A stretch of 64,000 nucleotides of DNA from Mobula hypostoma (GCF_963921235.1 NC_086104.1:153078001-153142000); one strand, 5' to 3'; positions 1-44,751 are shown, numbered from the stretch's first letter. Program-made: numbers and translations. Notes: a model not told the origin generated them from the sequence alone.

Positions 1-43
1 AACAAGTTAAAAAGGAGTCAGCTTCAAATAGAAATTTTTTTAC

Positions 44-17580: not shown

Positions 17581-18569
17581 TATATTTATTGTTCTCTAAT
17601 TATAATTTGTCCTGTGTTTTCCTTCATTACATTGGTAATTAACTTTAAAATTGTTTTATGCATTGTAAAACGCACAGGGCCACACAAGGTCAAAAACTCA
17701 AGGCAGTGATAAGAAACAGGTAGCCTGCAGCTAATTGAAGGGGGCTAAAAGAAGTAAGCAGCCGTGGAAATACTGAAACCTCAATGGGAGATGGGGCTTC
17801 CGGTTAACATGGTGCTGAGCTGCGGTTTCCATCAAGGTCATAGCTCAGGCGTAGTTGTTTTAGTAAGGTTCATAGGGATGATTTTGAGGACAGAGAGCGG
17901 AGTCAGGGATGTGGGGATGTAGAAGTTTGGACTGAGTCTAGCCCTCTGCTCCACATCTGAAGGCCAGTGATGATGTTGCCTTCGGACATCTGGCCCAGAA
18001 AGCACAGTGAACGAAGACCAGCATGGACAAGGGCCTCTCATCAGTTGATCAAGGTCAGCATGTCCCCCATAGGATCAGGTAGATCAGAGGTCCATGTGGG
18101 CCGCAGGTGTGATGGCCCGTGACACCCCCCCCCCCGCCCGCCAAGATACGTGAGTTGACAAGTCCAGAGTTAAAATCCTGAAGGTCGGAGTCCCAGCATT
18201 AGTGAGTCCAGAGTTTGAGGCCTGAGTTCAGGGTCCTGATATGAGAGAATCCAGAATACAAAGCCATAGTTTGAGGTACCATCATTGACAAATCCTGAAG
18301 TCAATCAGAAGTCTGAAGGGTGAGGCCCGACAGCCAGAGCCATGAGTCTGTAATTCCAGTGGGGAAGCCAGAGACCATTGTCTGCAAGTCCGGAGGCTGG
18401 AGGCCCGGCATACCGTGTGATTGGAGGACTGTGTGTTTGTATGTATGAGAGGAAAGAAAGGGGCTAGAGGACATTCCATTTTGGCACTGGCATCTACAGC
18501 CACTTGTGAGCTGCCCTAGCTCATCCTTAGATGTGTTGGTTCTTAATGGAAACAACATATTTCATTGTA

Positions 18570-18795
18570 TCAACACACACAAAAAATGCTGGTGAACGCA
18601 GCAGGCCAGGCAGCATCTATAGGAAGAAGTACAGTCGACGTTTTGAGCCGGGACCCTTCATCAGGACTGATGAAGGGTCCCGGGCTGAAACGTCCACTGT
18701 ACTTCTTCCTATAGATGCTGCCTGGCCTCCTGCATTCAGCACTTTTTGTGTGTGTCACTTGAATTTCCAGCATCTGCAAATTTCCTCTTGTCTGC
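18570..18795. mobile_element. Penelope-terminus-derived palindromic (hairpin) element
   Basis: Inverted arms of about 90 bp centred near 18665; related copy at 54654-54862. Confidence 0.8.
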
Positions 18796-19253
18796 GTTTT
18801 TATTTCATTGTATGTTTCAATGTACAATGTCCAGATAAATAATTCTGAATCTGAGAGCTTATAGATGTCAGAAACTTTATGTACTTTACCTTTTCACAGA
18901 ATATTCAAGGAAATTTGAAATGAAGAGGGGACTTGTGATTTGAAAATAACATATTTAATCAACCAATAAGAAAGTTTCTCCACCTGTACAGTAATAATTC
19001 AAATAATAACAATAATTATTGAATTATTATATTTTTGTATTTGAAAACTCAACACATTATTCTCACGATTAAATAGCTCTAAATGATAAAACGTAAACGT
19101 GAGCAAATATTGCTGCCTGTATATCTCAGTAATTAGAAGATAATTCTATCTACTGTTAATCAAATAAGAGATATTCTGTACTTTGTACATACATACTCTC
19201 TAAACCAACAATTTCTGATTTGTTTTCTAAATAACACAGAGAATTAAAATGCC

Positions 19254-19466
19254 TCATTTAGCTGTGAAGATCGTGATTCTGTTATGGTGTTTCTTCTCAT
19301 CCATTTCAACTGGCTGCTTGTCCCTGTGGGATGTGCTGATGTACCACCCATGATGTAGAGCCGACTCAAACTCAAAGTAATGGCCTGCACCTGAAACCTT
19401 CTTGAAGAAAATGAAGCGAAGCAGGTCAGTGGCACTACTGATATTTTGCAAATTCTGATCCCATTT
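19254..19466 (-). CDS. IL1B: IL1B copy A exon 6 (terminal)
   Basis: KWDQNLQ...LLRFIFFKK...FESALHHGWYIST...TIFTAK*; putative ATTAAA polyA signal at 18954-18959. Confidence 0.94.
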   Translation of the reverse strand, partial: KWDQNLQNISSATDLLRFIFFKKVSGAGHYFEFESALHHGWYISTSHRDKQPVEMDEKKHHNRITIFTAK

Positions 19467-22400
19467 CTGTGAAAATAAATGTCAGAAACGAAGTTAAGTA
19501 CAGTTACATTTCAAATGAGAAAGCTATAAATAGTATTACTCAGGACAGGCTGCCTCCACAGCAGGTGCTGAGCATGTGTTGCTGGGATGAGATTTGTGCC
19601 AGCTGCATGTTTGTAAAGATAGCCCTAACCTTGCCAACCCTTTCAGTATTTAAAGTGTTCAGGCTGGAGAGAATTGGGATCCTCTGCTCTGTTTAAACTT
19701 CTCATTACTTAATTACCTATCAGTTAAAAGTCGCTAACAATTCAGTTTTGAAACTGTTCTGAGTTGGCTGACCTGAATTGGGGAAGGGACATAGTTCTCA
19801 ACATTCCAGGATTGGGGACAAAAGTACAGAGTACTGACCACTGACCTCACAGATTAGGATATTAAGTAAGGATTTAGTTGTGATATCACTCTCCAGTCAA
19901 GAGCGTTCAGTTTCAATGATCAGCTCTGTAGAAATGTATTTTTTTCATCTTATGAGTGAGTGTGTGTGTGTGAGAGAGAGAGAAAGCATTAAACCTATCT
20001 TCTCAATGCTAACTTCTGATTGTGCCGTTTTACTCCTTTTTCCAATAATTTATTCTTTGTTCTCTTCCTTGCCATCAATTCACTTTGATTTTCATGCTAA
20101 CTAGCAAAACCTTGGGTAACATGCAGGGGACAATTAACCCGCAGGTCTTTAGGATACGGACAAAAGTGGAGCACCTGGAGCAAGCACACCTCCAGAATGG
20201 AGAATGGTCAGTACCTGGAATGGAAATTCTTCCGGAGGAAATCAGATATGGTGAAAGGTGTTGGAAGGTTCTCAATGATGTTATGGAACCTGAATATATG
20301 CTGGATATAGGCTAACAAAGCCAGTGTAAGGGAGATGTTTTGAAAAGTGGATAAAATTCTCTGTCACATGTGATTTGCAGAAGGCCCAAGGAAAAGGTGG
20401 AAGCAGAGGCAGATTCTCCAGACAACAATACATGGGACTGTGTACCAGTCAGTTAACCACATGCATACATGATTTCTTACCTCCACTCGCATCCTGGGAT
20501 TGTCCGGTGGCCCTGAGCACGAGAGGAACGTATTCTGATTGTTTATTCCCAGAACAACCGGCAAATAATTTACTTCACCGGAAGTTGCCTTGTAGTACCT
20601 CACATTAAGTGTTACTGTCAACCAAAGGAGGGATATTTTAGCACAGTCATCAAAATACATATATACTCATATCAATAAAAGTGCTGCAATGTGGTAGCTA
20701 CTTTATTTGGAGTTATAACCAAGCTATTCATTGCATCTAAGTAATCTAAGGCCATGAATGGAGCATGACACATTGGGCGGGGCAACTATTCAGACTCCCA
20801 TTCTTACCCATGATTCATTCATAACTTTGTTTAGCTCTATATTCCTATTTCAGCTGGAGAAGCATGCTGATGACAGGGTTAAATAAAATGTCGCAGGCTG
20901 AAGGCAGCGCATTTTTAGAGAGTTAAAGGTATGAGAGGGACATGTGAAAAGCAATTGAAGACATTTCCTATTTTGTGCAATGTTCTTTCCCATTCGTCGT
21001 AACACCTTGAAGAGTTAGATACTTCTGCCAATCTTTCCATATTTTAAGTACAACAAAAAAGTGAGAGCATAAAGTTTACCCACCTTCGTCTGATGGCTGC
21101 TGCAAGAACATGGCCAGGAGCTGGAAGTTCTCTGATAACTTCAGGCATTTGTCTTGTTCATCCCTCACTTGCTGACACTCAGTCTTCATGAACCTGTAGG
21201 AGCTGGGCACCACTTCAGCACCTTCATAGTTGGTGTAAGTGATGGCTTCTGTTGGCACAAATAAGATTAAGTTATTGATCATGGTATATTAACAGAGATT
21301 AAACATAAATGAAATCCCGGACCCAACTATTTCTTTACTATTCCTGGGCATTGTCAGTGTTGGCAAATCTGAGTGTATTGATTTGTAGTATTGGCAGTTC
21401 TGAGTGTATTGATTTGTCGTGGTTATTCTGTTGAACATAGAACATTACAGCACCATATAGGCCTTTCAGCCTATGAAATTGTGATGTCCTTTTAATCTGC
21501 TCTGAGATCAATCTAACCCTTCTGCATAACTCTCCAATTTTTTATATATCATCATCAATGCCTATCTTAGATATTCTTAAACGGTCCTAGTGTATCTGCC
21601 TCTGCCACCACACTTAGCAGTGCATTCCACACATCCACCACTCTTTTATAAAGACCTTACCTCTGACGTTCCTCCTGTACTATCCTCTGATCACCTTAAA
21701 ATTATGCTACCTTGTATGAGCCTTCTCTGCCCTGGGAAATGTTTCTGGCGATCCACTGTCTATTTTATCATCTTGTACATCTCTGTCAGGTCACCTCTCA
21801 TCCTTCTTTGCTTCAAGGAGAAAAGCCTTAGCTTGCTCAACCTTTCTTCATAAGACATGCTTTCCAGTCCAGTCAGTATGCTGTCTCTTTTGGGTTTTTT
21901 TTTTGATAACCCTTCTTCTCAAATCTTTGTGGGAAAGGCACAGTCCTGCATTTTGTAGGAAATCTCATGACAGTGATGAGCATCAGTGAAGGCTCAGTGT
22001 TAACAGAACCACTGGGATCAAGAGCAGATTGCAGGCCTTCACATTGGAACCAGTGCTTCCAATTGTAACTAATCACGACAGACAGAGTAACAATACTGAA
22101 AGGAAAGATCAGCTCACCTTCTACAAGTGCATTGAAGTTTCCAAGCAAATCAGTGTCTCCAAAGCAAGTACTTTCACAGTCCCAGCTGTTTGTGCATGGC
22201 TGCTGCAACTTCCTCTTGAATTTTTCAACTGCAAGAGCCAACATGATGGCTTTCTCCAGTGTCAGCTTTGCAGAACCAGCCGTGCTAATAGATAAGAACT
22301 TTCCCGTGATCTTCAATTGGTAACTGTCTGAATGGTGACGTGCAGTGCTCAGCTCCATCAGACTTGGTGATGTTTTTTGAAATGGGCTCTGCATAATGAG

Positions 22401-23533
22401 AAACCACCATTAAATCTCCCAGTTCAGCTATCATAATAATTTTAGAGGGCCTGATAGCTAGGGTACAGAACAATTGATATCAGGTCCATCCCAAGATCTG
22501 TGGGCTAAACATCAGACAGTGTAAAACTCACAGTTTAAAAGGGTCCCTGACATCATACTTTCCCATCTGGATTCTCTGATACCTCATGGCAATTAAATAT
22601 TTATTGATTCAAACTTGCACTAATTTTAACAATAATATCTTCCCCAAAACTTATTCTGGTATCATATCTATTATTCTTACCTTGACCCAGGGACAAGAAG
22701 TAGGAGATATAATATGACAATCCCCATTGTGCCAGTAACTTAAGGATCTGTAGATGAAAGACTTATTTCAGTCAGTTTATATGGAAAAGGGTAGATCACC
22801 TTCAGTAAGTTATTAACCATACATGAAAATCACAAATTCAAGAGATTCTGCAAATGCTAGAAATCCAGGGCAACACAAACAAAATGCTGGAGGAACTCAG
22901 CAGCTCAGGTTGCATCACCCAGCCTTTCTTTGACATTTTCCCCCTTCTTTTCCAGTCCCGATGAAGGGTCTTGGCCTGAAACTTCAGCTGTTTATTCATT
23001 TCAGTTACTGAAATAATTAGTTACATGTTGCTCTGAATCCTAGGCAATGGAAGTGGGGCCAGTCAGATATAAACCTGCTCCACGTCCACTTGTCTGTAGC
23101 TAGCCTTCACACACTTACAAAATAATATGTCTGGGATCTGGCAGGATGCACTGACCTTTATTTGAAAATTAGAAAAAACAATTCTGAGAAAACCGTAAAT
23201 ATTCTGAATATTGTCACAGTTACCAAATCTGATAATAATCAACTATAAGTAGACTATGCCACGCGTATAACCAATGTTATACTTCCCTTTCTCTAAAATA
23301 CTGCACAGACAATTAAGTCTAAATATTTTCTCCAAATTGTACTCTCATTCTTAATGATAAGAGTACCATTCTGTTGGTTTGGTTTGAGCTGAGATCAGAC
23401 ATATTTAGTAGCTGTAAATATATTCACTGTTCAAAAAGGGCACTAATATGTTTGCACAACTATGTTTTACATACTAAACAAAAAGTGCTGTAGAGAAACC
23501 ATTGGCTCACCTCAGGGATTCACTGTCAGCCAT
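19254..23533 (-). CDS. IL1B: Interleukin-1 beta, copy A (290 aa). Exons 23511-23533, 22681-22747, 22118-22388, 21084-21248, 20481-20614, 19254-19466.
   Basis: All introns are GT-AG with consistent phases; 873-nt open frame. IL-1 family signature-like FESALHHGWYISTSHRDKQPV, VRDEQDKCL, LPVVLGI..FLSC, LLRFIFFK; pro-domain LALAVEKFK. Syntenic with CKAP2L. Confidence 0.93.
20481..20614 (-). CDS. IL1B: IL1B copy A exon 5
   Basis: VTLNVRYYK...LPVVLGINNQNTFLSCSG...RVE; GTAAGA donor. Confidence 0.93.
21084..21248 (-). CDS. IL1B: IL1B copy A exon 4
   Basis: EAITYTNYEGAEVVPSSYRF...VRDEQDKCL...; phase 1-1. Confidence 0.92.
22118..22388 (-). CDS. IL1B: IL1B copy A exon 3 (propeptide)
   Basis: SPFQK...LALAVEKFK...FGDTDLL...LVE; AG/GT boundaries. 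Confidence 0.9.
22681..22747 (-). CDS. IL1B: IL1B copy A exon 2
   Basis: CTACAG acceptor, GTAAGA donor, 67 nt; conserved in copy B. Confidence 0.82.
23511..23533 (-). CDS. IL1B: IL1B copy A exon 1 (MADSESL+AG)
   Basis: Strong Kozak acaATGG; donor GAG|GTGAG; about 110 nt downstream of the TATA-like box. Confidence 0.78.
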
Positions 23534-23639
23534 TGTAATTTTTACAGATCCCGTCTCAGTCCTCGTAATAGCGTAGCTCTCAGATTGTCAGAATAGTACT
23601 GCGTGAGTTCTAATTTTGCTCTGCTGATGATCAGCCTCT

Positions 23640-23870
23640 ATCCCTTATTTAAAGTTCACTGTCCTTGTGTGCTCCTCCTCCAGGGTGTGACACAGTGAGT
23701 GGAAACTTTATGATTACAAAGTTTGGTGAATTAGCCTCTCACTTCCTCACTTGCAGATCTTGCCAAAATTACGTCCTTGTGACATGGAAGTTTGAAAATT
23801 TTTTTTAAAAATCAGAATAATATTACTGAGGTTGCACTGCAAAAGAATTAAAAATGAAATTCCCCTTTCT
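23640..23870 (-). promoter_or_regulatory. IL1B copy A proximal promoter: TATA-like TTTAAATAA (23645-23653), PU.1/ETS GAGGAAGTG (23740-23748), kB-like GGGGAATTTC (23856-23865)
   Basis: The TATA-like and PU.1 motifs recur at equivalent positions in copy B and the pseudogene; the kB-like motif recurs in the pseudogene flank. Confidence 0.6.
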
Positions 23871-25720
23871 TTATGTTTATTTACATTGGTTTGACAGCAA
23901 TTTTCTATCTCAATGTTTTGGAGGCTAAGAATCAAATTGTTTAATGATAATGCTGGAAAATTCATTTTGTAACAAACAGAAAATGTGGTTCTTTGTCCAT
24001 TCTGTTCTATTTCATTTATTAAATGGATTAAGATCAGTTTATTTGTCACATGTACATCGAAACATTCGGTGAAAGGCATCGTTTATGTCAAATCAGATCT
24101 ACCAGGTTTGTGCTGCCATGCTTCCGGTGCCAACGTGGCATGCCCACAAGCCTAACCGTATGTCCTTGGAATGTGAGAGGAAACCAGATACCCAGTGGAA
24201 ACCCATGCGTTCACAAAGAGAACATACCAACTACTTACAGACATTAGCCAGAACAAACTTTCCACCTGTGCACTGATCTGGTGAGCACTTAATCATTTCT
24301 TTCCAGATTTCCAGTTAGCGGAGTATTCTATTTTGTGTTTATGGACTATGTCAAAGGTTGCAGATCAATAAATCAAGATGTGTTATGGATAATTGTGCAT
24401 AGTGGAATTGATGCTTCCATGAGGTGGAAACACAATCAGATCAAAGTCACTGCTATTGTAGTCAAAAATGGAGATTAAGTATTAAATGATCTGAGGAGGC
24501 TATTCAATGGATATTCCCATCCTCAAAGATGGTATGCCTAGGCATTTATAATTACCATCAGACTTTAGTGCCAAGACAGTAATCAATCTCAGCCTCTTCC
24601 TAAAGTCTGAAGCACGACTGAAACTAATCATCAGTCACTTTAAAGAATTGCATTCCAGGAGTAACAGTGATGCCCCTTGATATTGTCAAAAGTCATTGAA
24701 TAGTAGATTGGTCTGTAAAGTAAAGCCCATGTTATTAAGAGGAGAGAGGGAAATTGAATCCAAAATTTGTTATATGGCAGGACACAAAGATAACGATTGT
24801 TGAGTGTGATTGTGATTGGAATTTGTGATGTTCACTGTAGGAGTCTACAGGGTTCAGAACACATTGCTTTGCTGTTTACAATATATATGTTTTAAATAGA
24901 TAGGCACGATCAATTAATCTGCACATGATAGAAAAATTGATTTCTGGAGGAAAGGTTTATACAGCAACAGAATGCAGTTGGTCTGGTCAGTTGTTTAGAA
25001 AAGTGATTTCCAGAGAAAAGATTTATACTGCAACAAGATGTAAATGGTCTGGTCATTTGGTCAGAAAAGTGGAAACAGGATTTTAACTATGGAAATAATT
25101 AATCAAGGTTTCTTTGGATCCAAAAGCGTTGTCTACAAGGATGGTGCCAGATTGTTAAGATTTGTAAAAAAAAAGACGGTACTCTGACGGTTGATCATGA
25201 TAAGATAAACAAATCCTTTCAGGAATTTTATACTTCTTTATATCAATCAGAATTTCCTGATGACCCCACTATAATGCACGAATTTTTGAAGACATTGAAT
25301 ATTCCAAAATTACCACCCAATGAACGTTTAGAACTAGATGTACCTATTACGGTAGAAGAAATAAAGAATGCTATATCCACCATGAATTCAGGTAAAGCAC
25401 CTGGTCCAGACAGTTATACAGTAGAATTTTTAAAATCCTTTTCTACTATACTTTCTCCTTGGTTATGTAGAATCTTTAAGGATGCAGTATTTATAGGTAA
25501 ATTACCACAATCTATTTATCGAGCTTCTATTTCCCTAATTCTTATAAAAGATAGGGATCCTACTGAATGTGCATCTTATTGGCCTATATCTTTGCTGAAT
25601 GTGGATTCTAAGATTTTTTTCTAAAATATTGGCAACGAGACTGGAGAATGTATTGCCTCAAATTATTTCTGTTGATCAGACTGGATTTATTAAAAATCGT
25701 TACTCCTTTAAGATTAGGAG

Positions 25721-26373
25721 AGGAGAAGATTGCGGCGCGACACAGCAAGCGTGGCCACTCCGAAGTGATATCGTATTTGTCAGTAGGTACCATGCACATT
25801 CCTGATTTGATGGAGACGGATCTGAGAAGCACGGAGGAACATCTGGAGAAGCTGCTGAAATGCCTGCTTCACTGCCGCTGCTATTGTGTGATCGAGAATC
25901 TCCGGAGGGGAAGGCCCCAAATCCTCGGCTTTGCCTATTGCCTGTTGCCGGGGCCGGGGTCGAAGTCGAAGTGCTCAGCAGAGATGGTGCTTGGTGTTCG
26001 AGGGCTGGTCGGAGGCTCGAAGTTTTCGGACGGACTCAAGAGTCGGCTGTGGTCGGGTACTTCCAGGGTGCTGCATCGGCAAGTTTGCGGCGCTGGAAGC
26101 TCATGGAAGGGAGAGTTTTTCTTCCTTCTACCATCTGCGTAAGATGATGGGACTTTCGAGAGACTTTGAGACATTTTTTTTACCGTGCTCATGGTCTGTT
26201 CTTTATCAAATTATGGTATTGCTTTGCATCGTTGTAACTGTATGTTATAATTATGTGGTTTTTGTCAGTTTTTCAGTCTTGGTTTGTCTTGTGTTTCTGT
26301 GATATCATTCTGGAGGAACATTGTAAATGACAGTCAAAGAGGACTGCGTGTCCTCTTAATCTAATCTAATCTA
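25721..26373 (+). mobile_element. About 650-bp non-autonomous retroelement nested in the L1; second copy at 52651-53331
   Basis: Interrupts ORF2 between ...IRR and LMNIAY; starts aggagaagat(t/g)gcggc and ends in (TAATC)n. Confidence 0.8.
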
Positions 26374-28489
26374 ATGAATATTGCTTATACTTCTTCACCT
26401 AGAACTCCAGAATGCGTCATTTCATTGGATGCTGAGAAAGCTTTTGATAGAATCGAATGGACATATTTGTTTAATACGCTTGAGAAATTTAATTTTAGTC
26501 CGATATTTATATCTTGGATTAAATTGATATACCTTACTCCTTTGGCTCCGATACTTACCAATAATCAGAGATCTCCCTTTTTTCAGTTATTCCGTGGTAC
26601 TAGGCGGGGTTGCCCTCAGTCCATTATTATTCGACATTGCCCTGGAACCGTTAGCTATTGCTATTTGTGACTCACCTAATACATTTGGTATTACCCGTGG
26701 GAATGAGATACATAAATTATCACTATATGCAGATGATTTACTATTATATATTTCTAACCCTGAGAAATCCATTCTGGCAGTATTATCTCTGTTTACTCAG
26801 TTTAGTAGTTTTTCTGGATACAAATTGAATCTTAGTAAGAGTGAACTTTTTCCATTAAATATGCAAGTTCCCATTTGTAGCTGTTCACCGTTTAGATTGA
26901 TTACTGACTATTTTACTTATTTGGGGGTTAAAATTGCTAAGAGGCATAAGGATTTATTTAAGCTCAATTTTTTACTGTTAATTAGTCAGGTTAAACAATT
27001 GCTTACTAAGTGGTCCCCATTGTCTCTATCACTGATTAGCCGAATCAATGCTATTAAAATGATTATTCTACCTAAATTTCTATATCTATTTCAAGCAGTA
27101 CCAATTTTTATTCCTAAATCCTTTTTTGATACTATTGATTCTAAAACGTCCTCTTATATATGGCAGAATAAGAATCTCAGGTTAAGTAAAAAATATTTAC
27201 AGAAGTCCAAGAAAGATGGTGGTTTAGCATTGCCGAATTTAAGATTCTATTACTGGGCAATTAATATTCGATATTTAATATTTTGGACGCAAGATTGGGA
27301 TATAATTCTAAGTCCACATTGGGTAAACCTTGAAGGTTACTCTGTACGAGGGTTTTCATTGGATTCTATTTTAGGAACTTCACTTCCCTTTGTGCTTTCT
27401 AAATTGAATAAGCAAATGGTTAATCCAATAATTAAACGCACATAATGAATATGGTTCGACTGCCGTAAATTTTTTGGTTTGAACAAATTTATATCATCAA
27501 GCCCTATTATATCTAATTTTTTTTCCAACCCTCTGTTATGGATCAAGCCTTTTTGATATGGAAAAGGAAGGGTATAAACATGTTTCCGTGATTTATTTTT
27601 GAATAACTGTTTCATGTCTTTTGAACAGTTGTCTAATAAATATAACTTGTCCAGATCCCATTTTTTTAGATATTTACAAATAAGGAACTTTTTAAATATC
27701 ACGCTACCTACCTTTCCAATTTCATACTCAGCTGATATCACAGAAAAAATTTTAGGTTTAAATCCTTATCAGAAGGGATTAATAGCAGCTATTTATGATA
27801 TAATTATGAAAATACAGCCTGGTATATCTGATAAAATTAAAAATGAATGGGAAAGGGAACTTCAACTTCACTTACCTGTAGAGAAATGGGAAAACATTTT
27901 TCAATTAGTTAGCTCTTCCTCTATATGTGCTAAACATACACTGATACAATTTAAGGTAATGCATAGGGCCCACATGTCTAAAGATAAGCTAGTTCGTGTT
28001 TATTCCCATATAAATCCTATTTGTGACAGATGTCACTCTGAAGTGGCTTCTTTGACTCTTAGCCCTCTTTTGGAAAAATGTTGGAAAGATATTTTTGATA
28101 CTATTTCAACAGTTTTGCATTTTGATTTACAACCCCATCCTATTACGGCAATTTTTGGTTTGCCAATGACGGAACATAGACCTTCATCCTCTTCAGCCTG
28201 TCGGATGATCGCATTTGTTACATTAATGGCCAGAAGATCTATTTTATTGAATTGGAAAGAGACCAATCCCCCTACTACATTTCAATGGTTTTCCCAAACT
28301 ATATCATGTTTAAATTTAGAAAAAATCAGAAGTGTCATTTTTGATCCTTCGGTTAAATTTGAAGAGACTTGGAAGTCATTTATTCAACATCTTCATATGA
28401 TGTAGTTTGACCTTTTCCGCATCCGTTTTATTAACTTAGAATATATGAATAGAGGAGTGGAGTTGACGACATTAATGAATTAATTCGAT

Positions 28490-28828
28490 CTAATAAGATA
28501 ATAAGAGAAATAGATAGAGTGGATAGCCAGCGCCTCTTCCCCAGGGCACCACTGCTCAATACGAGAGGACATGGCTTTAAGGTAAGGGGTGGGAAGTTCA
28601 AGGGGGATATTAGAGGAAGGTTTTTTACTCAGAGAGTGGTTGATGCGTGGAATGCACTGCCTGAGTCAGTGGTGGAGGCAGATACACTAGTGAAGTTTAA
28701 GAGACTACTAGACAGGTATATGGAGGAATCTAAGGTGGGGGCTTATATGGGAGGCAGGGTTTGAGGGTCGGCATAACATTGTGGGCCGAAGGGCCTGTAC
28801 TGTGCTGTACTATTCTATATGTTCTATG
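28490..28828 (+). mobile_element. CR1 3' fragment nested in the L1 3'UTR
   Basis: TRGHGFKV...FFTQRVVDAWNALP; ttctatg-type tail. Confidence 0.85.
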
Positions 28829-33180: not shown

Positions 33181-33199
33181 CTCCCCAACAGCACAAGCA

Positions 33200-35339: not shown

Positions 35340-36840
35340 TGTGTGTGCCTTCAAGAACATACCAAGTCCTCCCAAACTAGAAGTCCTGGATGAACCAAGA
35401 GATTTACAGTCTGCTGAATGCTAATCTGTGGCATTCAAGACTGACAATCCAGAACCCTACAAGAAGTACTTGTACAACCTAGAAAAGAGATTGTGAGAGC
35501 AAAAGGCATTTCTGTGTAAAGTTGGAGATACAATCGGATGTACAACAGCTGTGGCTGGATGAGCTCAACACTTTTATACACATTTTGTCAGAGAGAATAA
35601 GACCATATCTGTGGAAATCCCCAGGTCATCTGGCAACTCTGTGATTCGTGTCTCAGAAGCCAAAATTAGAACTTCCTTCAAAAGGGTGTACCCTCCTTGC
35701 AAGACATTAGGTCCTGATTGTGTACCTAACAGGGTACTGAAAATTTGTGCCAGCCAGCTGGCTGGAATGTTCAAGGACATCTTCAACCTCTCACTGCCAC
35801 AGTCAGAGGTTCCCATCTGCTCCAAAAGGCATCAGTCATACTGACGCACAAGGTTCAAAGTAAGTTTATTGTCAAAGTACATATATGTTACTATATACAA
35901 CCATGAGATTCATTTTCTTATGGGCATTCACAGTAAATACAAAGAAACACTACTGAATCAATGAAAAACCGCAAACAACAAGATGAAGAGTCCTTGAAAA
36001 TGAGTCCATAGAGTGAGAGAACAATATTAAGTGGACTGAAGTCGAGTGATGTTATTCCCTCTAGTTCGAGAGCCTGATGGTTGAGGGGTAATAACTGTTC
36101 CTAAACCCGGTGGTGTGAATCCTGAGGCTCCTGTACCTCTTTCCTGAAGGCAGCAGTGAGAAGAGGGCATAGCCTGAATGGTGGGGTCCTTGCTGATGGA
36201 TGCTGCTTTCCTGTGACAGCACTTCATTTAGATGCGCTCAGTGTCCGGGTGGGCTTTATCCGTGATCTGTGATAGACTGAGCTGTATCTTAAACTTTTTG
36301 TAGGCTTTTCTATTGAAGGGTATTGGTATTTCCATCCCAAGCCGTGATGCAACCAGTCAGTATAATCTCCACCTCAATTTACAGAAGTTTGTCATAATGT
36401 TAGATGACATGTTGAATCATCAAAAACTTTTTAGAAAGTAGAGGCGTTGCTGTGCTTCCTTTCTAATGGCGCTTGCGTGCTGGACCCAGGACGGATCCTC
36501 TGAAATGATAACGCTGAAGAATTTGAAGTTTCTGATTCTCTCCACCTCTGATGCCCCAATGACAACTGGCTCAAGGACCTCCAGTTACTTCCTTCTGCGG
36601 TCAATAATTAGCTCCTTGGTCTTACTGACATTGAGTGAGAGGTGGTTGTTGTTGTGGTACCACTCAGCCAGATTTTCAATCTCTCTCCTACAGTATATGC
36701 TAATTCGTCACCATCTTTTATTCTGTTAACAATGGAGATGTTGTCAGCAAACTTGCATTGGAGCTGTGCTTAGCCTCAAAGTTGTAAGTGTAAAGTGACT
36801 AGTGCAGCAGGCTAAGCACACAGCCTTGTGGTGCACCAAT
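35340..36840. mobile_element. Degenerate Rex/L2-group LINE fragments (+ at about 35340-35845, - at about 35850-36840)
   Basis: GPDCVPNRVLKICASQLAGMFKDIFNLSL on plus; SKTKELIIDL..FKFF-type segment on minus. Confidence 0.7.
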
Positions 36841-38110
36841 ATGAAAATCTGTTAACTCTGCTTCTCGTCCCATAGATGCTGCCTGACCCTGTGATCCTCT
36901 CCAGCATTTTCTATTTATGTTTCTAAGAATCTAAAGATATTTGCTTTTCTCTCTTTGATGCAAAAAAAGACGTTGTACTTCGCTTCAAACCTATTTTCCA
37001 CACAATGTGCTTTCAATGCTGGAGCTGTGTGCACTAACTTCTAACGAGTTGTTCTGGAATCCGCTCATTCATCCGATTAAACTGCATCAGCAGGTTCAAG
37101 TGTTCACTTTAAATGGCAATATGTCCACCTGTATCATTGGCCTATCTAAGTCTTCAAAGTTCACTACACACTCAAGTTTGTGTTCTTGTACATTTTGAAA
37201 TTGTTCCCTTTATTTAAGAAACCTTACTCTTTCAAGGTTTGACATTGTAAGTAACTATGAGGGAGAATATTTGCTTGGCTTGACGTGCAAAGATGTACCT
37301 CGGATGGACAACCAAAATGTTGTATTTATGATGGTTGGCTATATTTAACTAACATCACTGCAAGGTATGTTAGCTATTCACTTATTGTTCTCTAGTTATA
37401 AATTGTCTTGCCCTTTCCTTCATTACTCTAGTGATTAACTTTAACCATGCTTCCTTTATGCTCTGTAAAATGAGCTGGGCCACCCAAGGCCAAAAGCTCA
37501 AGGCAATGATAAGAAACGTAGCCAGCAGCTAATTAAAGGGGGCAAAAATAAACAAGTGGCTGTGGAAATACTGAAGCATCATTTGCCAATGAGAGATGGG
37601 GCTTCTGTACTTGCAAACCCTCCCCCCCACCAGATCAGAGGTCCATGTGGGCAGGAGGTTTGAAGGTCGGTGATCTTTGAGATATGAGAGTCAGCAAGGC
37701 CAGAGTTAAAGTCCTGAAGTCTACAGTCCCAACATCTGTGAGGCAGGTGCTTGAGGCCTGAATTCGGGGTCCTGTCATCAGCATCCAGAGTACAAAGCTT
37801 TTGTTTGAGGTACCATCATTGACAAATCATGGGATTGATACTGATGATCAAAGCCTGAAAGTCTGGAGGACTGTGTGCGAGTGTGTGCAAGGGAGGGAAG
37901 GAAGTGGCTTGTGGGCATGTTATGTTTGTGCTGGAATGTATGGCGACACCTGGGGGCTGCCCAGCTTGTCATTAAGTGTGATTTGGTGTGTTGGCGCTTA
38001 ATGGATACCACGTATTTTAATTTACATACAATAAATCAGTCTGAATCTGAGAATATTAAGGTAATATGAAAAGTGAAGAGGAGAACTTGTTATTTGAAAA
38101 TAATATATTT

Positions 38111-38417
38111 AATCAATCAATGAGAAGGTTTCTCCTCCAGTACAACAATAATTTAAATAATAACAATAAATATAGAAATATCATAATTCTGAATTCCAAA
38201 ACTCAGCACACTTTTTTCACCAATAAATAACTCCAAATGATAAAACTTAAATGCAAGCAAATATATAATCAACAAACAAGGTTTCTCCTCCAGTACAGCA
38301 ATAATTTAAATAATAACAATAAATATAGAAATATCATAATTCTGAGTTCCAAAACTCAGCATACCTTTTTCACCAATAAATAACTCCAAATGATAAAACA
38401 TAAGAGCAAGCAAATAT
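38111..38417 (-). repeat. About 153-bp tandem duplication in the IL1B copy B 3'UTR, carrying AU-rich elements
   Basis: gtttctcctccag begins at 38128 and again at 38281. Each unit has TTATTTATT and TTATTTAAA on the mRNA strand. Confidence 0.9.
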
Positions 38418-38560
38418 TGCTGCCTATACATATCAATAATTAGAAGACAGTTCTATCAACTATTAATCATATAAGAGATTCCCTGTACTTAGTACATACA
38501 TACGCACTAAACCAACAATTTCTGATTTGAGTTCTGAACAGTACAGAGACTTAAAATGCC

Positions 38561-38773
38561 TCATTTAGCTGTGAAGATAGTGATTCTCTTGTGGTGTTCC
38601 TTCACGTCCATTTCAACCGGCTGCCTGTTCCTGTGGGATGTGCTGATGTACCACCCACGGTACAGAGCCGATTCAAACTCAAAGTAATGGCCTGCACCTA
38701 AAACCTTCTTGAAGAACACGAAGCGAAGCAGGTCAGTGGCACTACTGATACTTTGCAAATTCTGATCCCATTT
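38561..38773 (-). CDS. IL1B: IL1B copy B exon 6 (terminal)
   Basis: LLRFVFFKK...FESALYRGWYIST...TIFTAK*; putative ATTAAA at 38108-38113. Confidence 0.94.
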   Translation of the reverse strand, partial: KWDQNLQSISSATDLLRFVFFKKVLGAGHYFEFESALYRGWYISTSHRNRQPVEMDVKEHHKRITIFTAK

Positions 38774-41700
38774 CTGAGCAAAGAAATGACAGAAACAAAG
38801 TTAAGTACAGTTACATTTTAAATGACAAAACTGTAAATGATATTACTCAGGACAGGTTGGCTTCCACATAGCAGATGTCTGAGCATGTGTTGCTGGGATG
38901 GGATTTGTGCCAGCTGCATGTTTGTAAAGACAGTCCTAACCTTGCCAACCCTTTCAGCAGTCAAAGTGTTCGTGAGGAGTTCCAGTCTGGAGAGCAATGG
39001 TATGCTTTGCTCTGTTTGAACTTCTCATGGCTTAATTATCTATAATCCATAAATTGCTAACAATTCAGTTTTGAAACTGTTCTGAGTTGGCTGACCTGAA
39101 TTGGGGAGGGACGTAGATCTCAATATTCCAGGACTGGGGACAAAAGTACAGAGTACTGACCACTGACCTCACAGATTAGGATATTAAGTGAGGATTTAGT
39201 TGTGAAATCACTCTTCAGTCAAGAACTTTCAGTTTCAATGATCAGATCTGTAGAAAATGTATTTTTTTCCATTTAGAGAGAGAGAGCTTTCAGTCTTTCT
39301 CAATGCTAGCTTTTGATTGTGCCATTTTACCCATTTTTCCAAAAATTTATTCTTTGTTCTGTTCCTTGCCATCAATTCACTTTGATTTTCCTGCTATCCA
39401 GTAACACCCTGGGTAACATGCAGAGGACAATTAATCTGCACATCTTTGGGATATGGAGGAAATTGGAGCACCTGGAGCAAGCACACATCCAAACTGGAGA
39501 ATGGCCAGTACCCTGGAAAGGAAATTCTTCAGGAAGAATTTGGATATGGTGAAAGGTGTTGGAAGGTTTCTCCCTGCGGTTATGGAACCTTAAAAAATGC
39601 TGGATATAGGCTAACCAAGCTATTGTAAGGGACACATTTCGAAAAGTGGATCAAATTCTGTCACATGCGATTTGCAGAAAGCTCAAGGAAAAGGTGGAAG
39701 CAGAGGCAGCTTCTCCAGACAACAACATGGGACTGTGTACCAGTCAGTTAACCACGTGCATACATGATTTCTTACCTCCACCTGCATCCTGGGATTGTCC
39801 GGTGGCCCTGAGCACGAGAGGAACATATTCTGATTGTTTATTCCCAGAACAACTGGCAAGTAATTTACTTCACCAGCAGTTGCCTTGTAGTACCTCACAT
39901 TCAGCATTACTGTCAACCAAAGGAGGGATATTTTAGCACAGTCATCAAAACACATATATGCTCATATCAATAAAAGTGCTGCAATTTGATAGCTACTTTA
40001 TCTGGAGTTATAACCAAGCCATTCATTGGATCTAAGTTAACCGTGGAAACAACTGGAGCATGACACATTGGTGCAAGACAGAACTATTCGGACTCCCATT
40101 CCTACCCATAATTGATTCATAGCTTTGCTTAGCCCTATATTCCTATTTCAGCTGGAGAAGCATGCTGATAACAAGGTTAAATAAAATGTCACAGCCTGAA
40201 GGCAGCACATGTTTAGGGAGTTAAAGGTATGAAAGGGACATGTGAAAAGCAATTGAAGCCATTTCCTCTTCTGTGCGATGTTCTATCCCATTCGTCATAA
40301 CACCTTGAAGATTTAGATACTTCTGCCAATCTTTCCATATTTTAAGTACAACAGAAAAGTGGGAGCATAAAGTTTACCCACCTTCGTCTGATGGCTGCTG
40401 CAAGAACATGGCCAGGAGCTGGAGATTCTCTGATAACTTCAGGCATTTGTCTTGTTCATCCCTCACTTGCTGACACTCAGTCTTCATGAACCTGTAGGAG
40501 CTGGGCACCACTTCAGCATCTTCATAGTTGGTGTAAGTGATGGCTTCTGTTGGCACAAATAAGATTAAGTTATTGATCATGGTATATTAACAGAGATTAA
40601 ACATAAATGAAATCCCTGACCCAACTATTTCTTTACTATTCCTGGGCATTGTCAGTGTTGGCAAATCTGAGTGTATTGATTTGTAGTATTGGCAACTCTG
40701 AGTGTATTGATTTGTTGTGGTTATTCTGTTAAATGTAGAACATTACAGCACCATATAGGCCCTTCAGCCCATGAAATTGTGATGTCCTTTTAACCTATTC
40801 TAAGATCAATCCAACCTTTCTCTCCTGCAAAACTCTGCATTTTTTAATATATCATTCATGCCTATCTTAGATGTTCTTAAATGGTCCTAGTGTATCTGCC
40901 TCTGCCACACACTTGGCAGTGTGTTCCACGTACCCACCACTCTTTTATAAAGACCTTACCTCTGACATTCCTCCAGTACTTTTCTCTGATCACCTTAAGA
41001 TTATGCTACCTTGTATTAGCCTTTTCTGCCCTGGGAAAAGTTTCTAGCCACCCACTGTCTATCGTATCATCTTATGCACCTCTATCAGGTCATCTCGCAT
41101 TCTTTGTCTCATGACAGTGAATGAGCAAAAGTGAAGGCTCAGTGTCAACAGAACCACTGGGATCAGGAGCAGATTGCAGGCCTTCACATTGGAGCCACTG
41201 CTTCCAATTGTAACTAATCACGACAGACAGAGTAACAATACTGAAAGGAAAGATTAGCTCACCTTCTACAAGTGCATTGAAATTTCCAAGCAAGTCAACA
41301 TCTTCAAAGCAAGTACTTTCACAGCCCCAGCTGTCTGTGCATGGCTGCTGCAACTTCTCCTTGAATCTTTCAACAGCAAGGGCCAACATGATGGCTTTCT
41401 CCAGTGTCAGCTTTGCAGAGCCAGTCGTGCTAATGGACGAGGACCTCCCTGTGATCTTCAAGTGGTAACTGTCTGAATGGCGACGTGCAGTGCTCAGCCC
41501 CATTGGTGATGTTTTTTGAAGTGGACTCTGCATAATGAGAAACCACCAATAAATCCCCCAATTCAGCTATCACAATAATTTTAGAGCGCCTGATAGCTAG
41601 GGTACGGAACAATTGATAAGCAGGGAGAAGTCTATCCTAGGATTCGTGGGATAAACATCAGACAGTGTGTAAGACTTGAAACCTCACAAATAAAAATTAA

Positions 41701-42758
41701 TTCTGACATCGTGCTTTTCTGTTGTGATTTTGATACCTCATGGCAATTAAATATTTATTGATTCAAACTTGAAATAATTTTAACAAAAATATCTTCCCCA
41801 AAATCTGTTCTGGTATCATCTTGATAATTCTTACCTTGACCCGGACACAGGAAGTAGGAGATGATATATGACAATCACTGTTGTGCCGGTAACTTAAGGA
41901 TCTGCAGATGAAATAATTGTCTTGGTCAGTTTATATGGAAAAAGATAAAACCACCTTTAGTAAATTATCAACCGCACAAGAAAATCGCAAACACAGGAGA
42001 TTATGCAGATGCTGGAAATCCAGAGCAACACACACAAAATTCTGGAGGAACTCAGCAGCTCAGGGAGCATCACCTAGCCTTCCTTTGGCATCTTCCCCCT
42101 TTCTTTCCAGTCCTGAAGAAGAGTCTTGACTCATAACGTCAACTATTTATTTAATTTCGTACATGAAAATCTCAAAGTTACTGAAATTGTCAGTTATGTG
42201 TTGCTATGAATCCTAGGCAGTGGAAGTGGGGCCAGTCAGATATAACCCTACTCCACATCCACTTGTCTGAAGCAGGCTTTCACACACTTACAAAATCATA
42301 TTTCTGGGCTCAGGCAGGATGCACTGACCTTTCTTTGTAAATTAGAAAAATTATTCTAAGAAAACCTTACAAACTATGAATATTGCCACAGTTAACAAAT
42401 CTGATAATAAGCGACAGGCAAGTTTAATTATTAATATTGTATGGCAGACAGATAACCAATGTTATATTTCCCTTTCACTCTAAAGTACTGCACTGATGAT
42501 TAAGGCTGGGCAATTTCTCCAACCTGTATTCTCATTCTTTATGATAAGAATTTCATTCTTTCGGTTTGGTTTGAGCTCTGGTCAGACATATTTATTAGAT
42601 GCAAATATATACACTATTCAAAATGGGGCACCAGTGTGATTGCATAGTACTGTAAGTTTTAAATGCTAAATAAAATTACAGTAGACAAAACCGTGGGCTT
42701 ACCTTAGAGATTCACTCTCAGCAATTGGGATTTTTACTGATCCAGTCTCGGTCCTCAT
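38561..42758 (-). CDS. IL1B: Interleukin-1 beta, copy B (299 aa). Exons 42703-42758, 41835-41901, 41263-41527, 40382-40546, 39776-39909, 38561-38773.
   Basis: Exon-by-exon paralog of copy A; 900-nt open frame; signature FESALYRGWYISTSHRNRQPV; all splice sites intact. Confidence 0.93.
39776..39909 (-). CDS. IL1B: IL1B copy B exon 5
   Basis: VMLNVRYYK...LPVVLGI...FLSCSG...QVE; 134 nt. Confidence 0.93.
40382..40546 (-). CDS. IL1B: IL1B copy B exon 4
   Basis: EAITYTNYEDAEVVPSSYRF...; 165 nt. Confidence 0.92.
41263..41527 (-). CDS. IL1B: IL1B copy B exon 3
   Basis: SPLQK...LALAVERFK...FEDVDLL...LVE; 6 nt shorter than in copy A. Confidence 0.9.
41835..41901 (-). CDS. IL1B: IL1B copy B exon 2
   Basis: 67 nt, AG/GT, homologous to 22681-22747. 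Confidence 0.82.
42703..42758 (-). CDS. IL1B: IL1B copy B exon 1 (MRTETGSVKIPIAESESL+AG)
   Basis: First ATG after the TATA-like box, in frame; AAG|GTAAG donor. Confidence 0.75.
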
Positions 42759-42854
42759 AATGGCGAAGCTCTCTGAAGTTGTATCTGACCGTCTCAGATT
42801 GTCAGGATATTTCTGTGTGAGTTTCTAAAGTTGCTCTGCTGACGAACAGCCTTT

Positions 42855-43000
42855 GTTCCTTATTTAAAGCTCACTGAACTCACATGCTCCTCCTCTCGGG
42901 TGTGCCACTGTGTTTGGAAATTTTACAATTGCAGTCTTGTTTGGTGAATTATCTGCCCACTTCCTCATCTTGCAGATCTTCCCAAAATTAAGCTCTGGTG
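42855..43000 (-). promoter_or_regulatory. IL1B copy B proximal promoter: TATA-like box (42860-42868), PU.1/ETS site (42958-42966)
   Basis: Homologous to 23640-23790. Confidence 0.6.
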
Positions 43001-44751
43001 GCATAAAAGAGAAAATCTGTAGATGCTGGAAATCCAAGCCACTCACACAAAATGCTGGAGGAAGTCAATAGGCCAGGCAGCATCCATGGAAAAGAGTACA
43101 AACTCTTGCTGAAGGTTCTCAGCCTGAAATGTCGACTGTCCACAACACTAGCTGTATGTCTTTGGAATGTGAGAGGAAACTAGATACCCAGTGGAAACCC
43201 ACGCATTCACGAAGAGAACATACAAACTACTTATAGTCATTAGCCAGAACAAAATTTTCTCCTGTGCACTGATCTGGCGAGCATTTAATCATCTCTTTCC
43301 AGAACTCCAGTTAGTGGAGCATTCTATTTTGTGTTTACAGACTATCTCAAAGCCAAAGTCTGCAGATCAATAATCAAGAATTTATTCATTGTAATTGTGC
43401 ATAGTGGAATTGATGCTTCATGAGGTGGAAACACAATCAGATCAAAGTCACTGCTATTGTGATCAAAAATGGAGATTAAGTATTAAATGGTCTGAGGAGG
43501 CTATTCAATGGATATTCCCATCCTCAAAGATGGTATGCCCAAGCATTCATAATTACCATCAGACTTTAGTACCAAGACAGCAATCAATCTCATCCTCTTC
43601 CTAAAGTCTGAAGCACAACTGAAACTAATCATCAGTCACTTTAAAGAGTTGAATTCCAGGAGTATTGCCCCTTGATATCGTCAAAAGTCGTCAAATAGTA
43701 GATTGGTCTGTAAAATAAAGCCCATGCTCTTAAAGGGAGAGAGGGAAATTAAATCCAAAATTTGTTAAATGGCAGGACACAAAGATAAAGATTGCTGAGT
43801 GTGATTGGAATTTGTGATGTTCACTGTAGGGGTCTACAGGGTTCAGAACACACTGCTTTGCTTTTTACAATATACATGGTTTAAGTAGTAGGCATGATCA
43901 ATTAATTTGCAGATGATAGAAAAATTGATTTCTAGAGGAAAGGTTTATACTGCAACAAGATGTAGATGGTCTGGTCAGCTGGTCAGAAAAGTGGAAACAG
44001 GATTTTATCCATGGAAGTATTTAATCAAGGTTTCTTTGGATCCAAAAGCGTTGTCTAGAAGGATGGTGGAAGTAAATTCAATAACAAAACTTTCAATCAA
44101 AAATTTGATAAAATCTTGAAGGAAAATATACAAATATGCAGGGTTATGGTGAAAGAACAGTCAAATGTGACTACCATAACATTCTTTCATCTGGATGAAA
44201 CTTCAAATGATGTCATATAATTCCTTTTCCTTCCCTTCCCTATAGCCTAACTCTGAAAATAGAACAAAAGAACGGATGTGCAGGTTAACAGAAGGTGGAG
44301 CTAAACTGTTGAGTCAAATATGTTAGCATATAATATTCCCTCAGCTGCCCATTCACGTTTTCAAAGCCCAGAAAGGTATTACTTTCTAACGGATGTGATT
44401 CCATCTTCACTAACACAAGCAAATGTCCACACCCATTTCTTCTTTCAAAGTCAGTTAACACAAAGGGATCAGTATCAATCATCACCTTTGGACTTAGTCC
44501 CAGTACTTGCATGCCAAACTTTCATCATAGATGTTTTTTATGTGAGACAAAACTGAGCAACATAAGCCACTGTCATCTTGAGGGAAAGTTTCAGGAAATT
44601 GTAATACGTCAGTTCACTAAGGTCAGTAACTGCATTCACAAGAAACATTCTAGCTCTCAATGCATACCAGAATGCCTATGGTCAATTGTACTTTATATAC
44701 AGGTTAATGATAACAGATGAGGAGCGTTTGATGGCTGAAGCATTCGGTGTG

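What the first reader, a model, noticed from the sequence alone, without database searches (positions are those of the whole stretch)
17585..44703. Tandem IL-1beta birth-and-death cluster next to CKAP2L: two intact, diverging paralogs plus a pseudogene
Seen: two complete 6-exon IL-1beta genes (290 and 299 aa) in collinear duplicated units, with a third decayed copy between them. Established: CKAP2L flanks the IL1A/IL1B locus in mammals, where IL1A is an IL1B-related paralog. Inference: this is an independent expansion of IL-1beta at the same locus in a cartilaginous fish. The paralogs differ at four regulatory layers (promoter, start codon, processing site, mRNA stability), which suggests a two-cytokine system with divided roles.
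Basis: partly seen in the sequence, partly recalled or inferred. Interest (0 to 1): 0.85.

Follow-up and report, generated by a model that had tools for sequence, protein, structure and literature searches.

The report
Two old IL-1beta genes in rays
This stretch of a devil-ray genome holds two intact, transcribed copies of the inflammatory cytokine gene IL-1beta plus two decayed leftovers next to CKAP2L; the pair arose once in the stingray/devil-ray lineage and is already in public gene annotation, so it is a real but modest finding.

Summary
On the minus strand lie two six-coding-exon IL-1beta genes: A (CDS 23533-19254, 290 aa) and B (CDS 42758-38561, 299 aa). All introns are GT..AG. They sit in about 7 kb duplicated units.

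A non-processed relic lies between them (30317-31586). Only exon 4 is recognisable, with two stops and a frameshift. CKAP2L is confirmed at 43-10863. A fourth relic lies in its intron 2.

Both proteins are 100% identical to Mobula hypostoma RefSeq models (XP_062913179.1 and XP_062913178.1), so the genes are already annotated. A tree shows A-type and B-type orthologues in Mobula (2 species), Hypanus and Hemitrygon. The duplication falls on the myliobatiform stem; other sampled batoid orders show one sequence type. It is therefore independent of the mammalian IL1A/IL1B split.

Both copies are spliced in RNA contigs. Pairwise dN/dS is 0.34.

The "four regulatory layers" hold only in part:
- The proximal promoter is conserved.
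- The short start is a shared A-lineage trait.
- The Asp-to-Gly linker change is private to this species' A copy.
- The extra AU-rich elements in B are real, from a 153-nt 3'UTR duplication.

Divided roles remain untested. Several sharks also carry multiple near-identical IL-1beta models.

The parts
43..10863 (-). 5' part of CKAP2L. Exons at 10863-10819, 6449-6363, 2863-2795 and 1302-43; the rest lies off the window.
   Evidence: ORF 40-1314(-) is 99% identical to M. hypostoma CKAP2L, 742 aa, PF15297. tblastn exon map.
5161..5427 (-). Fourth IL-1beta relic: end of exon 6 plus start of the 3'UTR, inside CKAP2L intron 2.
   Evidence: Collinear blastn hits to exon 6 of A and B (E 5e-9 and 0.005). 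Non-repetitive three-way alignment.
17586..29711 (-). Duplicated unit A, interrupted by a 4.1 kb retroelement insertion at 25006-29131.
   Evidence: Self-BLAST. RVT_1 hit for ORF 26594-27445.
18954..19253 (-). Gene A 3'UTR up to the ATTAAA signal. It holds 3 ATTTA motifs.
19254..19466 (-). Gene A coding exon 6, including the stop.
   Evidence: Junction 19466|20481 in an A-specific contig of X2, which is absent from B at 98%. Model.
20481..20614 (-). Gene A coding exon 5.
   Evidence: Junction 20614|21084 in an X4 contig with 0 mismatches.
21084..21248 (-). Gene A coding exon 4. It holds the linker Gly130.
   Evidence: The acceptor is placed by homology to B and by identity to the RefSeq model.
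22118..22388 (-). Gene A coding exon 3 (propeptide).
   Evidence: Junction 22388|22681 in an X2 contig with 0 mismatches. Model.
22681..22747 (-). Gene A coding exon 2.
23511..23533 (-). Gene A coding part of exon 1. The ATG sits at the position of the conserved second Met; the ancestral first ATG reads ACG.
23645..23748 (-). Gene A proximal promoter: TATA-like box 23652-23645 and GAGGAAGT core 23748-23741.
30317..31586 (-). Non-processed IL-1beta pseudogene. It keeps a promoter relic (31586-31344), a piece of intron 3, exon 4 (31216-31061; two stops and one frameshift), intron 4 and pieces of intron 5. Coding exons 1-3, 5 and 6 are missing.
37382..44624 (-). Duplicated unit B.
   Evidence: Self-BLAST.
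38125..38417 (-). 153-nt tandem duplication (1.9 copies, 95% matches) in the gene B 3'UTR. It raises the ATTTA count to 7.
   Evidence: TRF. Motif count. RNA contig 38217-38399 spans the repeat junction with 0 mismatches in four runs.
38561..38773 (-). Gene B coding exon 6, including the stop.
   Evidence: Junction 38773|39776 in RNA contigs.
39776..39909 (-). Gene B coding exon 5.
   Evidence: Junction 39909|40382 in all four runs.
40382..40546 (-). Gene B coding exon 4. It holds the linker Asp139.
   Evidence: Junction 40546|41263.
41263..41527 (-). Gene B coding exon 3.
   Evidence: Junction 41527|41835 in all four runs.
41835..41901 (-). Gene B coding exon 2.
   Evidence: The loose end at 41903 continues into exon 1 sequence found at 42705-42734.
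42703..42758 (-). Gene B coding part of exon 1 (start MRTE...).
42860..42966 (-). Gene B proximal promoter: TATA-like box 42867-42860 and GAGGAAGT core 42966-42959.

Best explanation
The window is the CKAP2L-IL1B locus of a devil ray. By protein identity it is Mobula hypostoma or a near-identical genome. A segment of about 7 kb carrying a whole IL-1beta gene, with its promoter and 3'UTR, was duplicated head-to-tail in the common ancestor of stingrays (Dasyatidae) and devil rays (Mobulidae). This happened after that lineage split from the other sampled batoid orders.

Both daughters (A, 290 aa; B, 299 aa) have been kept as working genes. Each encodes a leaderless pro-cytokine with an N-terminal propeptide, a linker and a C-terminal IL-1 domain. 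Both share a conserved proximal promoter with a TATA-like box and an ETS/PU.1-type core. Both are transcribed and correctly spliced.

The mature cytokine domains differ by only two fixed residues. The lasting differences lie outside that domain. A lost the ancestral first ATG and starts at the conserved internal Met. It also has three fixed propeptide changes. In this genome, B carries a duplicated AU-rich 3'UTR block (7 versus 3 AUUUA), and the distal upstream regions differ through repeat insertions.

Inferred, not shown: the two genes make nearly the same cytokine under partly different transcript or precursor control, with B the more tightly controlled and more variable message. Two older copies have decayed: the pseudogene between A and B, and a 3' fragment in CKAP2L intron 2. 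So the locus has turned over by birth and death.
For: Gene models and splice sites.

RNA contigs: all four downstream B junctions plus the exon 1 link at 0 mismatches. Three A junctions come from A-specific contigs (searches compared).

Family: Pfam IL1 above its cut-off. A profile of the family hits solved IL-1beta structures at 3.7e-26 to 3e-23, against about 1e-9 for IL-1Ra and weaker for IL-36/37/38.

Identity to RefSeq models of M. hypostoma, and paired models in M. birostris, Hypanus sabinus and Hemitrygon akajei.

Tree: myliobatiform clade 100/99, A group 97-98/95, B group 92-94/86.

Selection: dN/dS 0.34 overall and 0.27 in the mature part, with dS 0.19.

Conserved proximal promoter in A, B and the pseudogene. 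Fixed paralogue differences. AU-rich counts and the 153-nt duplication. Relics. CKAP2L. CKAP2L proximity is a published marker of IL-1beta orthology (PMC5861070).
Against: No functional data exist for either protein. Two A junctions (exon 1-2 and exon 3-4) were not seen in the listed contigs. They rest on homology and on the RefSeq model.

The RNA libraries are coded, so tissue and stimulus are unknown. Low-depth intronic contigs show that pre-mRNA or DNA is also present in them.

The 3'UTR and promoter differences could be checked only in this genome, because DNA of the other rays could not be fetched. Their conservation is therefore unknown.

Introns 3-5 are 89-92% identical and introns 1-2 are 81-85%. 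Partial gene conversion may therefore blur the dating.

The AlphaFold model was unusable (pLDDT 33), so the fold is inferred from sequence homology only.
Confidence: 0.85

Rival explanations
1. Sub-functionalised two-cytokine system. Here A and B would have divided roles in the manner of mammalian IL-1alpha and IL-1beta: a steadier, differently processed A and a sharply inducible, caspase-processed B.
For: Both copies have been retained with dN/dS below 1 in four species of two families. The A-lineage start shift and three fixed propeptide changes are shared. B has 7 ATTTA motifs and A has 3. The B to A contig depth ratio varies among libraries, about 6-8 in X3 and about 1-2.5 in X1, X2 and X4. 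The tool itself warns that depth is a poor measure, so this is a weak hint.
Against: Gly130 is private to this species' A copy; the other A orthologues keep Asp. The same Asp is also absent in the single-type IL-1 of Scyliorhinus canicula and Narcine. Shark IL-1 was not cut by human caspase-1 in the one published test (PMC9382457). The proximal promoter is conserved. Only two fixed differences lie in the mature domain.
Confidence: 0.25
2. Assembly artefact: A and B are mis-stacked alleles or a collapsed or expanded haplotig, not two loci.
For: None was found.
Against: Intron identity is only 81-92%, with different repeat insertions, a 4.1 kb retroelement in one unit only and a 153-nt duplication in one 3'UTR only. 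Distinct A and B transcripts occur in the same libraries. Both types are annotated in four species and group by type, not by species.
Confidence: 0.02
3. One copy is an expressed but functionally dead or dying duplicate, and the pair is retained only by chance or for dosage.
For: The mature domains are nearly identical, so there is no sign of new receptor specificity. The locus has a record of losing copies, with two relics. Several sharks carry multiple near-identical copies, which suggests frequent and possibly neutral copy-number change.
Against: Reading frames are intact in all eight myliobatiform genes across two families. Pairwise dN/dS is 0.27 in the mature part. Splice sites are canonical and spliced transcripts exist for both copies.
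Confidence: 0.12

Closest known systems
Vertebrate IL-1beta (IL1B), including the cloned elasmobranch genes of Scyliorhinus canicula and Triakis scyllium
   Same: It has the Pfam IL1 domain. Solved IL-1beta structures match over the whole mature domain. It is a leaderless precursor with a propeptide. It lies next to CKAP2L in the same orientation. It has six coding exons. From memory, and not tested here, the last three coding exon sizes (165, 134 and 213 nt) nearly equal those of human IL1B.
   Different: There are two diverged copies per genome, not one. The IL-1 signature motif region reads FESAL-H/Y-H/R-GWYIST, without the Pro of the PROSITE pattern as I recall it. Copy A has a shortened propeptide start.
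Mammalian IL1A/IL1B tandem pair
   Same: It is a head-to-tail tandem duplication of an IL-1beta-type gene beside CKAP2L, with all genes on the same strand. The copy nearer CKAP2L sits where IL1A sits. The differences lie mainly in the propeptide and in regulation.
   Different: The origin is independent: the myliobatiform stem here, against the mammalian stem reported in PMC5861070. The ray paralogues are 87% identical and have almost the same mature domain, whereas IL-1alpha and IL-1beta are highly diverged. No evidence was obtained for an IL-1alpha-like nuclear signal or for calpain processing.
Multi-copy IL-1beta-like gene models in sharks (Cetorhinus maximus 5, Carcharodon carcharias 3, Mustelus asterias 3, Pristiophorus japonicus 4)
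   Same: These are lineage-specific IL-1beta copy-number expansions in elasmobranchs, carried on single chromosomes or contigs in RefSeq.
   Different: The shark copies are 98-99.7% identical within a species, so they are recent or homogenised. The ray pair is old, diverged and orthologously conserved across two families.
Teleost IL-1beta paralogues (type I/type II; salmonid and cyprinid duplicates)
   Same: There is more than one IL-1beta gene in a non-mammalian vertebrate, with differences in regulation.
   Different: As I recall it, the teleost sets stem largely from whole-genome duplications and older splits. The ray pair comes from a local tandem duplication.

Membership tests
IL-1 family / IL-1beta | IL1 domain (Pfam PF00340) above the curated cut-off | tested here: met
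   A scores 60.5 bits and B 65.3 bits against a cut-off of 25.
IL-1 family / IL-1beta | Closer to IL-1beta than to other IL-1 family ligands | tested here: met
   The family profile hits PDB IL-1beta (chicken and human) at 3.7e-26 to 3e-23. IL-1Ra scores 1e-9 and IL-36/37/38 score 1e-5 to 5e-10. No IL-1alpha appears among the hits. All database relatives are named interleukin-1 beta or interleukin-1 beta-like.
IL-1 family / IL-1beta | Beta-trefoil fold of the mature domain | tested here: inconclusive
   The AlphaFold2 model from a 20-sequence alignment failed (mean pLDDT 33). The sequence alignment to solved IL-1beta covers chain residues 5-160.
IL-1 family / IL-1beta | Leaderless precursor with an N-terminal propeptide and no signal peptide | tested here: met
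   By inspection, the first 30 residues of both proteins are polar and about 130-140 residues precede the IL-1 domain. No signal-peptide predictor was run.
IL-1 family / IL-1beta | Conserved synteny with CKAP2L (orthology marker in PMC5861070) | tested here: met
   The first CKAP2L exon at 10863-10819 lies about 8 kb from the 3' end of gene A, on the same strand.
IL-1 family / IL-1beta | Caspase-1 cleavage at a linker Asp, giving the mature cytokine | not testable with these tools
   B has Asp139 and A has Gly130 at the aligned linker position. Whether any ray protease cuts there is unknown. Shark IL-1 was not cut by human caspase-1 (PMC9382457).
Mammalian IL-1alpha-type paralogue | Descent from the mammalian-stem IL1B duplication | tested here: not met
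   A and B are sisters within Myliobatiformes (100/99). Other batoids and sharks lie outside.
Non-processed (duplicative) pseudogene, for 30317-31586 | Keeps promoter and intron sequence collinear with the parent gene; coding sequence is disabled | tested here: met
   The promoter, intron 3, 4 and 5 blocks are collinear with A and B at 69-78% identity. Exon 4 has two stops and a frameshift, and five coding exons are missing.

The most novel reading that the evidence does not exclude
Stingrays and devil rays may have evolved their own two-ligand IL-1 system, convergent with mammalian IL-1alpha/IL-1beta. On this reading it was kept since before the Dasyatidae-Mobulidae split. Copy A (truncated propeptide start, fewer AU-rich elements) would act as the steadier, differently processed ligand. 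Copy B would be the sharply inducible one. This would give a natural replicate for asking why IL-1 signalling repeatedly splits into two ligands at this locus.
Probability: 0.2. Interest if true: 0.6.

Novelty: new member of a known kind. Interest (0 to 1): 0.35.

Why it matters
Published overviews describe IL-1beta as present across vertebrates beside CKAP2L (PMC5861070). One states that fish and amphibians have one IL1 gene, while the tandem IL1A/IL1B pair belongs to mammals (PMC9382457).

The ray pair is a second, independent and long-retained tandem split at the same locus. RefSeq models also suggest recurrent IL-1beta copy-number gains in several sharks. This gives comparative immunologists a natural replicate for studying what is partitioned after an IL-1 duplication: propeptide, processing or mRNA stability.

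The gain is limited. Both genes are already annotated, their mature domains are almost identical, and no functional difference has been shown.

Tried and rejected
Structure. The AlphaFold2 prediction from the 20-sequence elasmobranch alignment failed (pLDDT 33). I therefore ran no fold search and made no fold claim.

DNA of related genomes. The Hypanus loci returned gene positions but no DNA because the sample file is too large. The Pristis protein was not on record. I could not test in other species for synteny, for the pseudogene or for conservation of the 3'UTR duplication.

Other searches. The ESM Atlas look-up of the CKAP2L exon gave only a weak lead (score 0.71); the homology search replaced it. 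An Rfam scan of the whole window found nothing.

Start codon. I first considered a start at the ATG just before exon 3, or the out-of-frame ATG in exon 2 of A. I rejected both after the RNA junction 22388|22681 and the open frame from exon 1 fixed the model.

Mis-stacked alleles. Rejected; see the rival explanations.

Literature. I found no paper describing IL-1beta paralogues in rays. This covers only the library searched.
Full report
**What is there**

The window has no N. A self-comparison pairs 17586-25005 plus 29132-29711 with 37382-44624 at 81-89% identity, in the same orientation. Unit A is interrupted at 25006-29131 by an insertion that carries a reverse-transcriptase ORF (RVT_1).

**Gene models**

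Both genes are on the minus strand.

- Gene B. RNA contigs from four libraries of one study lie on it at 98% or more. They give four GT..AG junctions with zero mismatches: 38773|39776, 39909|40382, 40546|41263 and 41527|41835. A loose end at 41903 continues into sequence that I located at 42705-42734, which is exon 1. Reading from the ATG at 42758 gives 299 aa.
- Gene A. The equivalent boundaries all carry AG and GT, and the ORF from the ATG at 23533 gives 290 aa.
- RNA support for A. Three junctions come from contigs that are A-specific: 22388|22681 in X2 with 0 mismatches, 20614|21084 in X4 with 0 mismatches, and 19466|20481 in X2, which is absent from B at 98% (searches compared).
- Not seen. 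The A junctions between exons 1-2 and 3-4 were not among the listed joints. They rest on homology with B and on the public model.

**Family**

Both proteins pass Pfam IL1 (PF00340) at 60.5 and 65.3 bits against a cut-off of 25. A profile of 20 cartilaginous-fish relatives matches solved IL-1beta structures over the whole mature domain at 3.7e-26 (chicken) to 3e-23 (human). It matches IL-1Ra at about 1e-9 and IL-36/37/38 more weakly. An AlphaFold model from the shallow alignment failed (pLDDT 33), so the beta-trefoil fold is inferred, not shown.

**Whose genome, and is this known?**

A protein search returned only cartilaginous-fish proteins named interleukin-1 beta or interleukin-1 beta-like. 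Cluster listing and pairwise comparison show two things:

- A is 100% identical to XP_062913179.1.
- B is 100% identical to XP_062913178.1, of Mobula hypostoma. The accessions are consecutive and both lie on a 162,150,189-bp record.

The left-edge ORF 40-1314(-) is 99% identical to that species' CKAP2L on the same-length record. Four CKAP2L exons map to 10863-10819, 6449-6363, 2863-2795 and 1302-43.

So CKAP2L, gene A, the relic and gene B all lie on the minus strand. As I recall it, human CKAP2L, IL1A and IL1B also share one strand in that order. CKAP2L proximity is a published marker of IL-1beta orthology across vertebrates (PMC5861070). Both genes are thus already annotated. I found no paper that describes the pair.

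**Age and origin of the duplication**

M. birostris, Hypanus sabinus and Hemitrygon akajei each also have one 290-aa model and one 299- or 319-aa model. In maximum-likelihood trees:

- The eight myliobatiform sequences form one clade (100/99).
- That clade splits into an A group (97-98/95) and a B group (92-94/86).
- Each group repeats the Mobula/dasyatid split.
- Pristis, Narcine, three skates and all sharks lie outside.

The duplication therefore happened once, on the myliobatiform stem. It is independent of the mammalian IL1A/IL1B duplication (PMC5861070).

This also disposes of the mis-stacked-allele idea, as do three further points: 81-92% intron identity, unit-specific insertions, and distinct transcripts of both genes in the same libraries.

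**Selection**

| Region | dN/dS |
|---|---|
| Whole CDS | 0.34 |
| Propeptide | 0.40 |
| Mature part | 0.27 |

dS between A and B is 0.19. Positions fixed within each paralogue group but different between groups are:

- the missing first 11 residues in A;
- four positions in the propeptide;
- two positions in the mature domain (Phe/Leu at 162/171 and Asn/Lys at 282/291).

The two genes therefore encode nearly the same cytokine.

**The four "layers"**

- Promoter. An alignment of A, B and the pseudogene shows about 180 bp upstream of a TATA-like box conserved in all three. This includes a GAGGAAGT ETS/PU.1-type core. Further upstream the sequences part because of repeat insertions, and A has the 4.1 kb retroelement about 1.4 kb upstream. 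The claim holds only for distal sequence.
- Start codon. Most elasmobranch IL-1beta proteins begin MRTE and have a second Met at position 12. All four A orthologues start at that second Met, and in this window the first ATG reads ACG. This is an old, shared A trait. The Met12-to-Ile change on the B side is confined to Mobula. The dasyatid B models start 20 codons further upstream.
- Processing site. B has Asp139 and A has Gly130 in the linker. Gly is private to this species' A; the other seven myliobatiform sequences have Asp. The Asp is also missing in S. canicula and Narcine. In the one experiment I found, shark IL-1 was not cleaved by human caspase-1 (PMC9382457). This layer is not a property of the paralogue pair.
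- mRNA stability. Up to the first ATTAAA signal, A has 3 ATTTA motifs and B has 7. The excess comes from a 153-nt tandem duplication (38125-38417, 1.9 copies, 95% matches). An RNA contig spans its junction with zero mismatches in four runs. This is real here; whether it is conserved could not be checked.

**Relics**

The copy between A and B consists of collinear blocks at 30317-30408, 30414-30595, 30580-31308 and 31364-31586, at 69-78% identity to A and B. It keeps the promoter and parts of introns 3-5.

Of the coding sequence it keeps only exon 4 (31216-31061), which has two in-frame stops and a frameshift. It keeps introns and promoter, so it is a duplicative pseudogene, not a processed one.

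In the intron 4, exon 4 and intron 3 stretch it is about 70% identical to A and B, which are about 90% identical to each other there. It therefore looks older than the A/B split, unless A and B were homogenised. Its exon 4 shares two myliobatiform-type residues with A and B and keeps one ancestral residue, which is slight support for an origin on the same stem.

A fourth fragment, the end of exon 6 plus the start of the 3'UTR, lies at 5161-5427 in CKAP2L intron 2 on the same strand. The birth-and-death description is fair.

**Context**

RefSeq also lists several non-isoform IL-1beta-like models per species in four sharks:

| Species | Models |
|---|---|
| Cetorhinus maximus | 5 |
| Carcharodon carcharias | 3 |
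| Mustelus asterias | 3 |
| Pristiophorus japonicus | 4 |

These are 98-99.7% identical within each species and cluster by species. Copy-number gain at IL-1beta thus seems recurrent in elasmobranchs. The ray pair stands out for being old, diverged and kept as orthologous pairs.

**How it most likely works**

Shown: there are two intact, spliced, selectively constrained IL-1beta genes with a shared proximal promoter.

Inferred:
- Both genes are driven in myeloid-type cells through that promoter.
- Both yield a leaderless precursor that a protease trims in the linker.
- B's message is more strongly subject to AU-rich-element decay control.

The contig depth ratio of B to A is about 6-8 in one library and about 1-2.5 in three others. 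This hints that B varies more. The tool warns that such depths are poor measures, and the samples are coded.

**Verdict**

The finding is a new member of a known kind, already present in public annotation.

**Earlier notes**

Earlier notes of this scan on the same window (fourth fragment, ARE dosage, start-codon switch, Gly/Asp site) describe the same features. I re-derived each one here.

Noticed in passing
459-845 (minus-strand CKAP2L exon 4): A 39-bp tandem repeat of 9.9 copies at 97% identity. It encodes a repeated Gly/Ala/Pro/Arg-rich 13-residue unit inside CKAP2L. The window and the M. hypostoma protein each hold 8 exact copies of that unit. The M. birostris model is 52 aa shorter, so repeat number may differ between species.
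   Followed up: partly
5161-5427: A relic of the IL-1beta exon 6 end and 3'UTR lies inside CKAP2L intron 2, on the same strand as the live genes. In one short 3'UTR block of the alignment it matches copy B more closely than copy A.
   Followed up: yes
18467-18800, 22809-22975, 41977-42127 (also 29708-29828, 43007-43100, 54651-54864): A short interspersed repeat lies in intron 1 of both genes and downstream of A. It attracts very high summed RNA-contig depth (about 3,000 to 150,000) and many false 'joints'. It is probably an abundant transcribed SINE-like element. It has no Rfam match.
   Followed up: partly
Gene A versus gene B introns (19467-23510 and 38774-42702): Identity steps from 81-85% in introns 1-2 to 89-92% in introns 3-5, and exon 4 is 98% identical. 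This could reflect partial gene conversion of the 3' half after the duplication.
   Followed up: no
7506-8810(+), 14207-14785(-): Retroelement ORFs combine an RVT_1 hit with a short match to Pfam ALKBH8_N. The region between CKAP2L and gene A, and the region between the pseudogene and gene B, are largely repeat-derived.
   Followed up: no
42758-42830 (gene B 5'UTR): The frame upstream of the B start is open and matches the 20-residue N-terminal extension of the dasyatid B models (319 aa). In Mobula the upstream ATG is absent. Three different start positions are therefore in use across the myliobatiform IL-1beta genes.
   Followed up: partly
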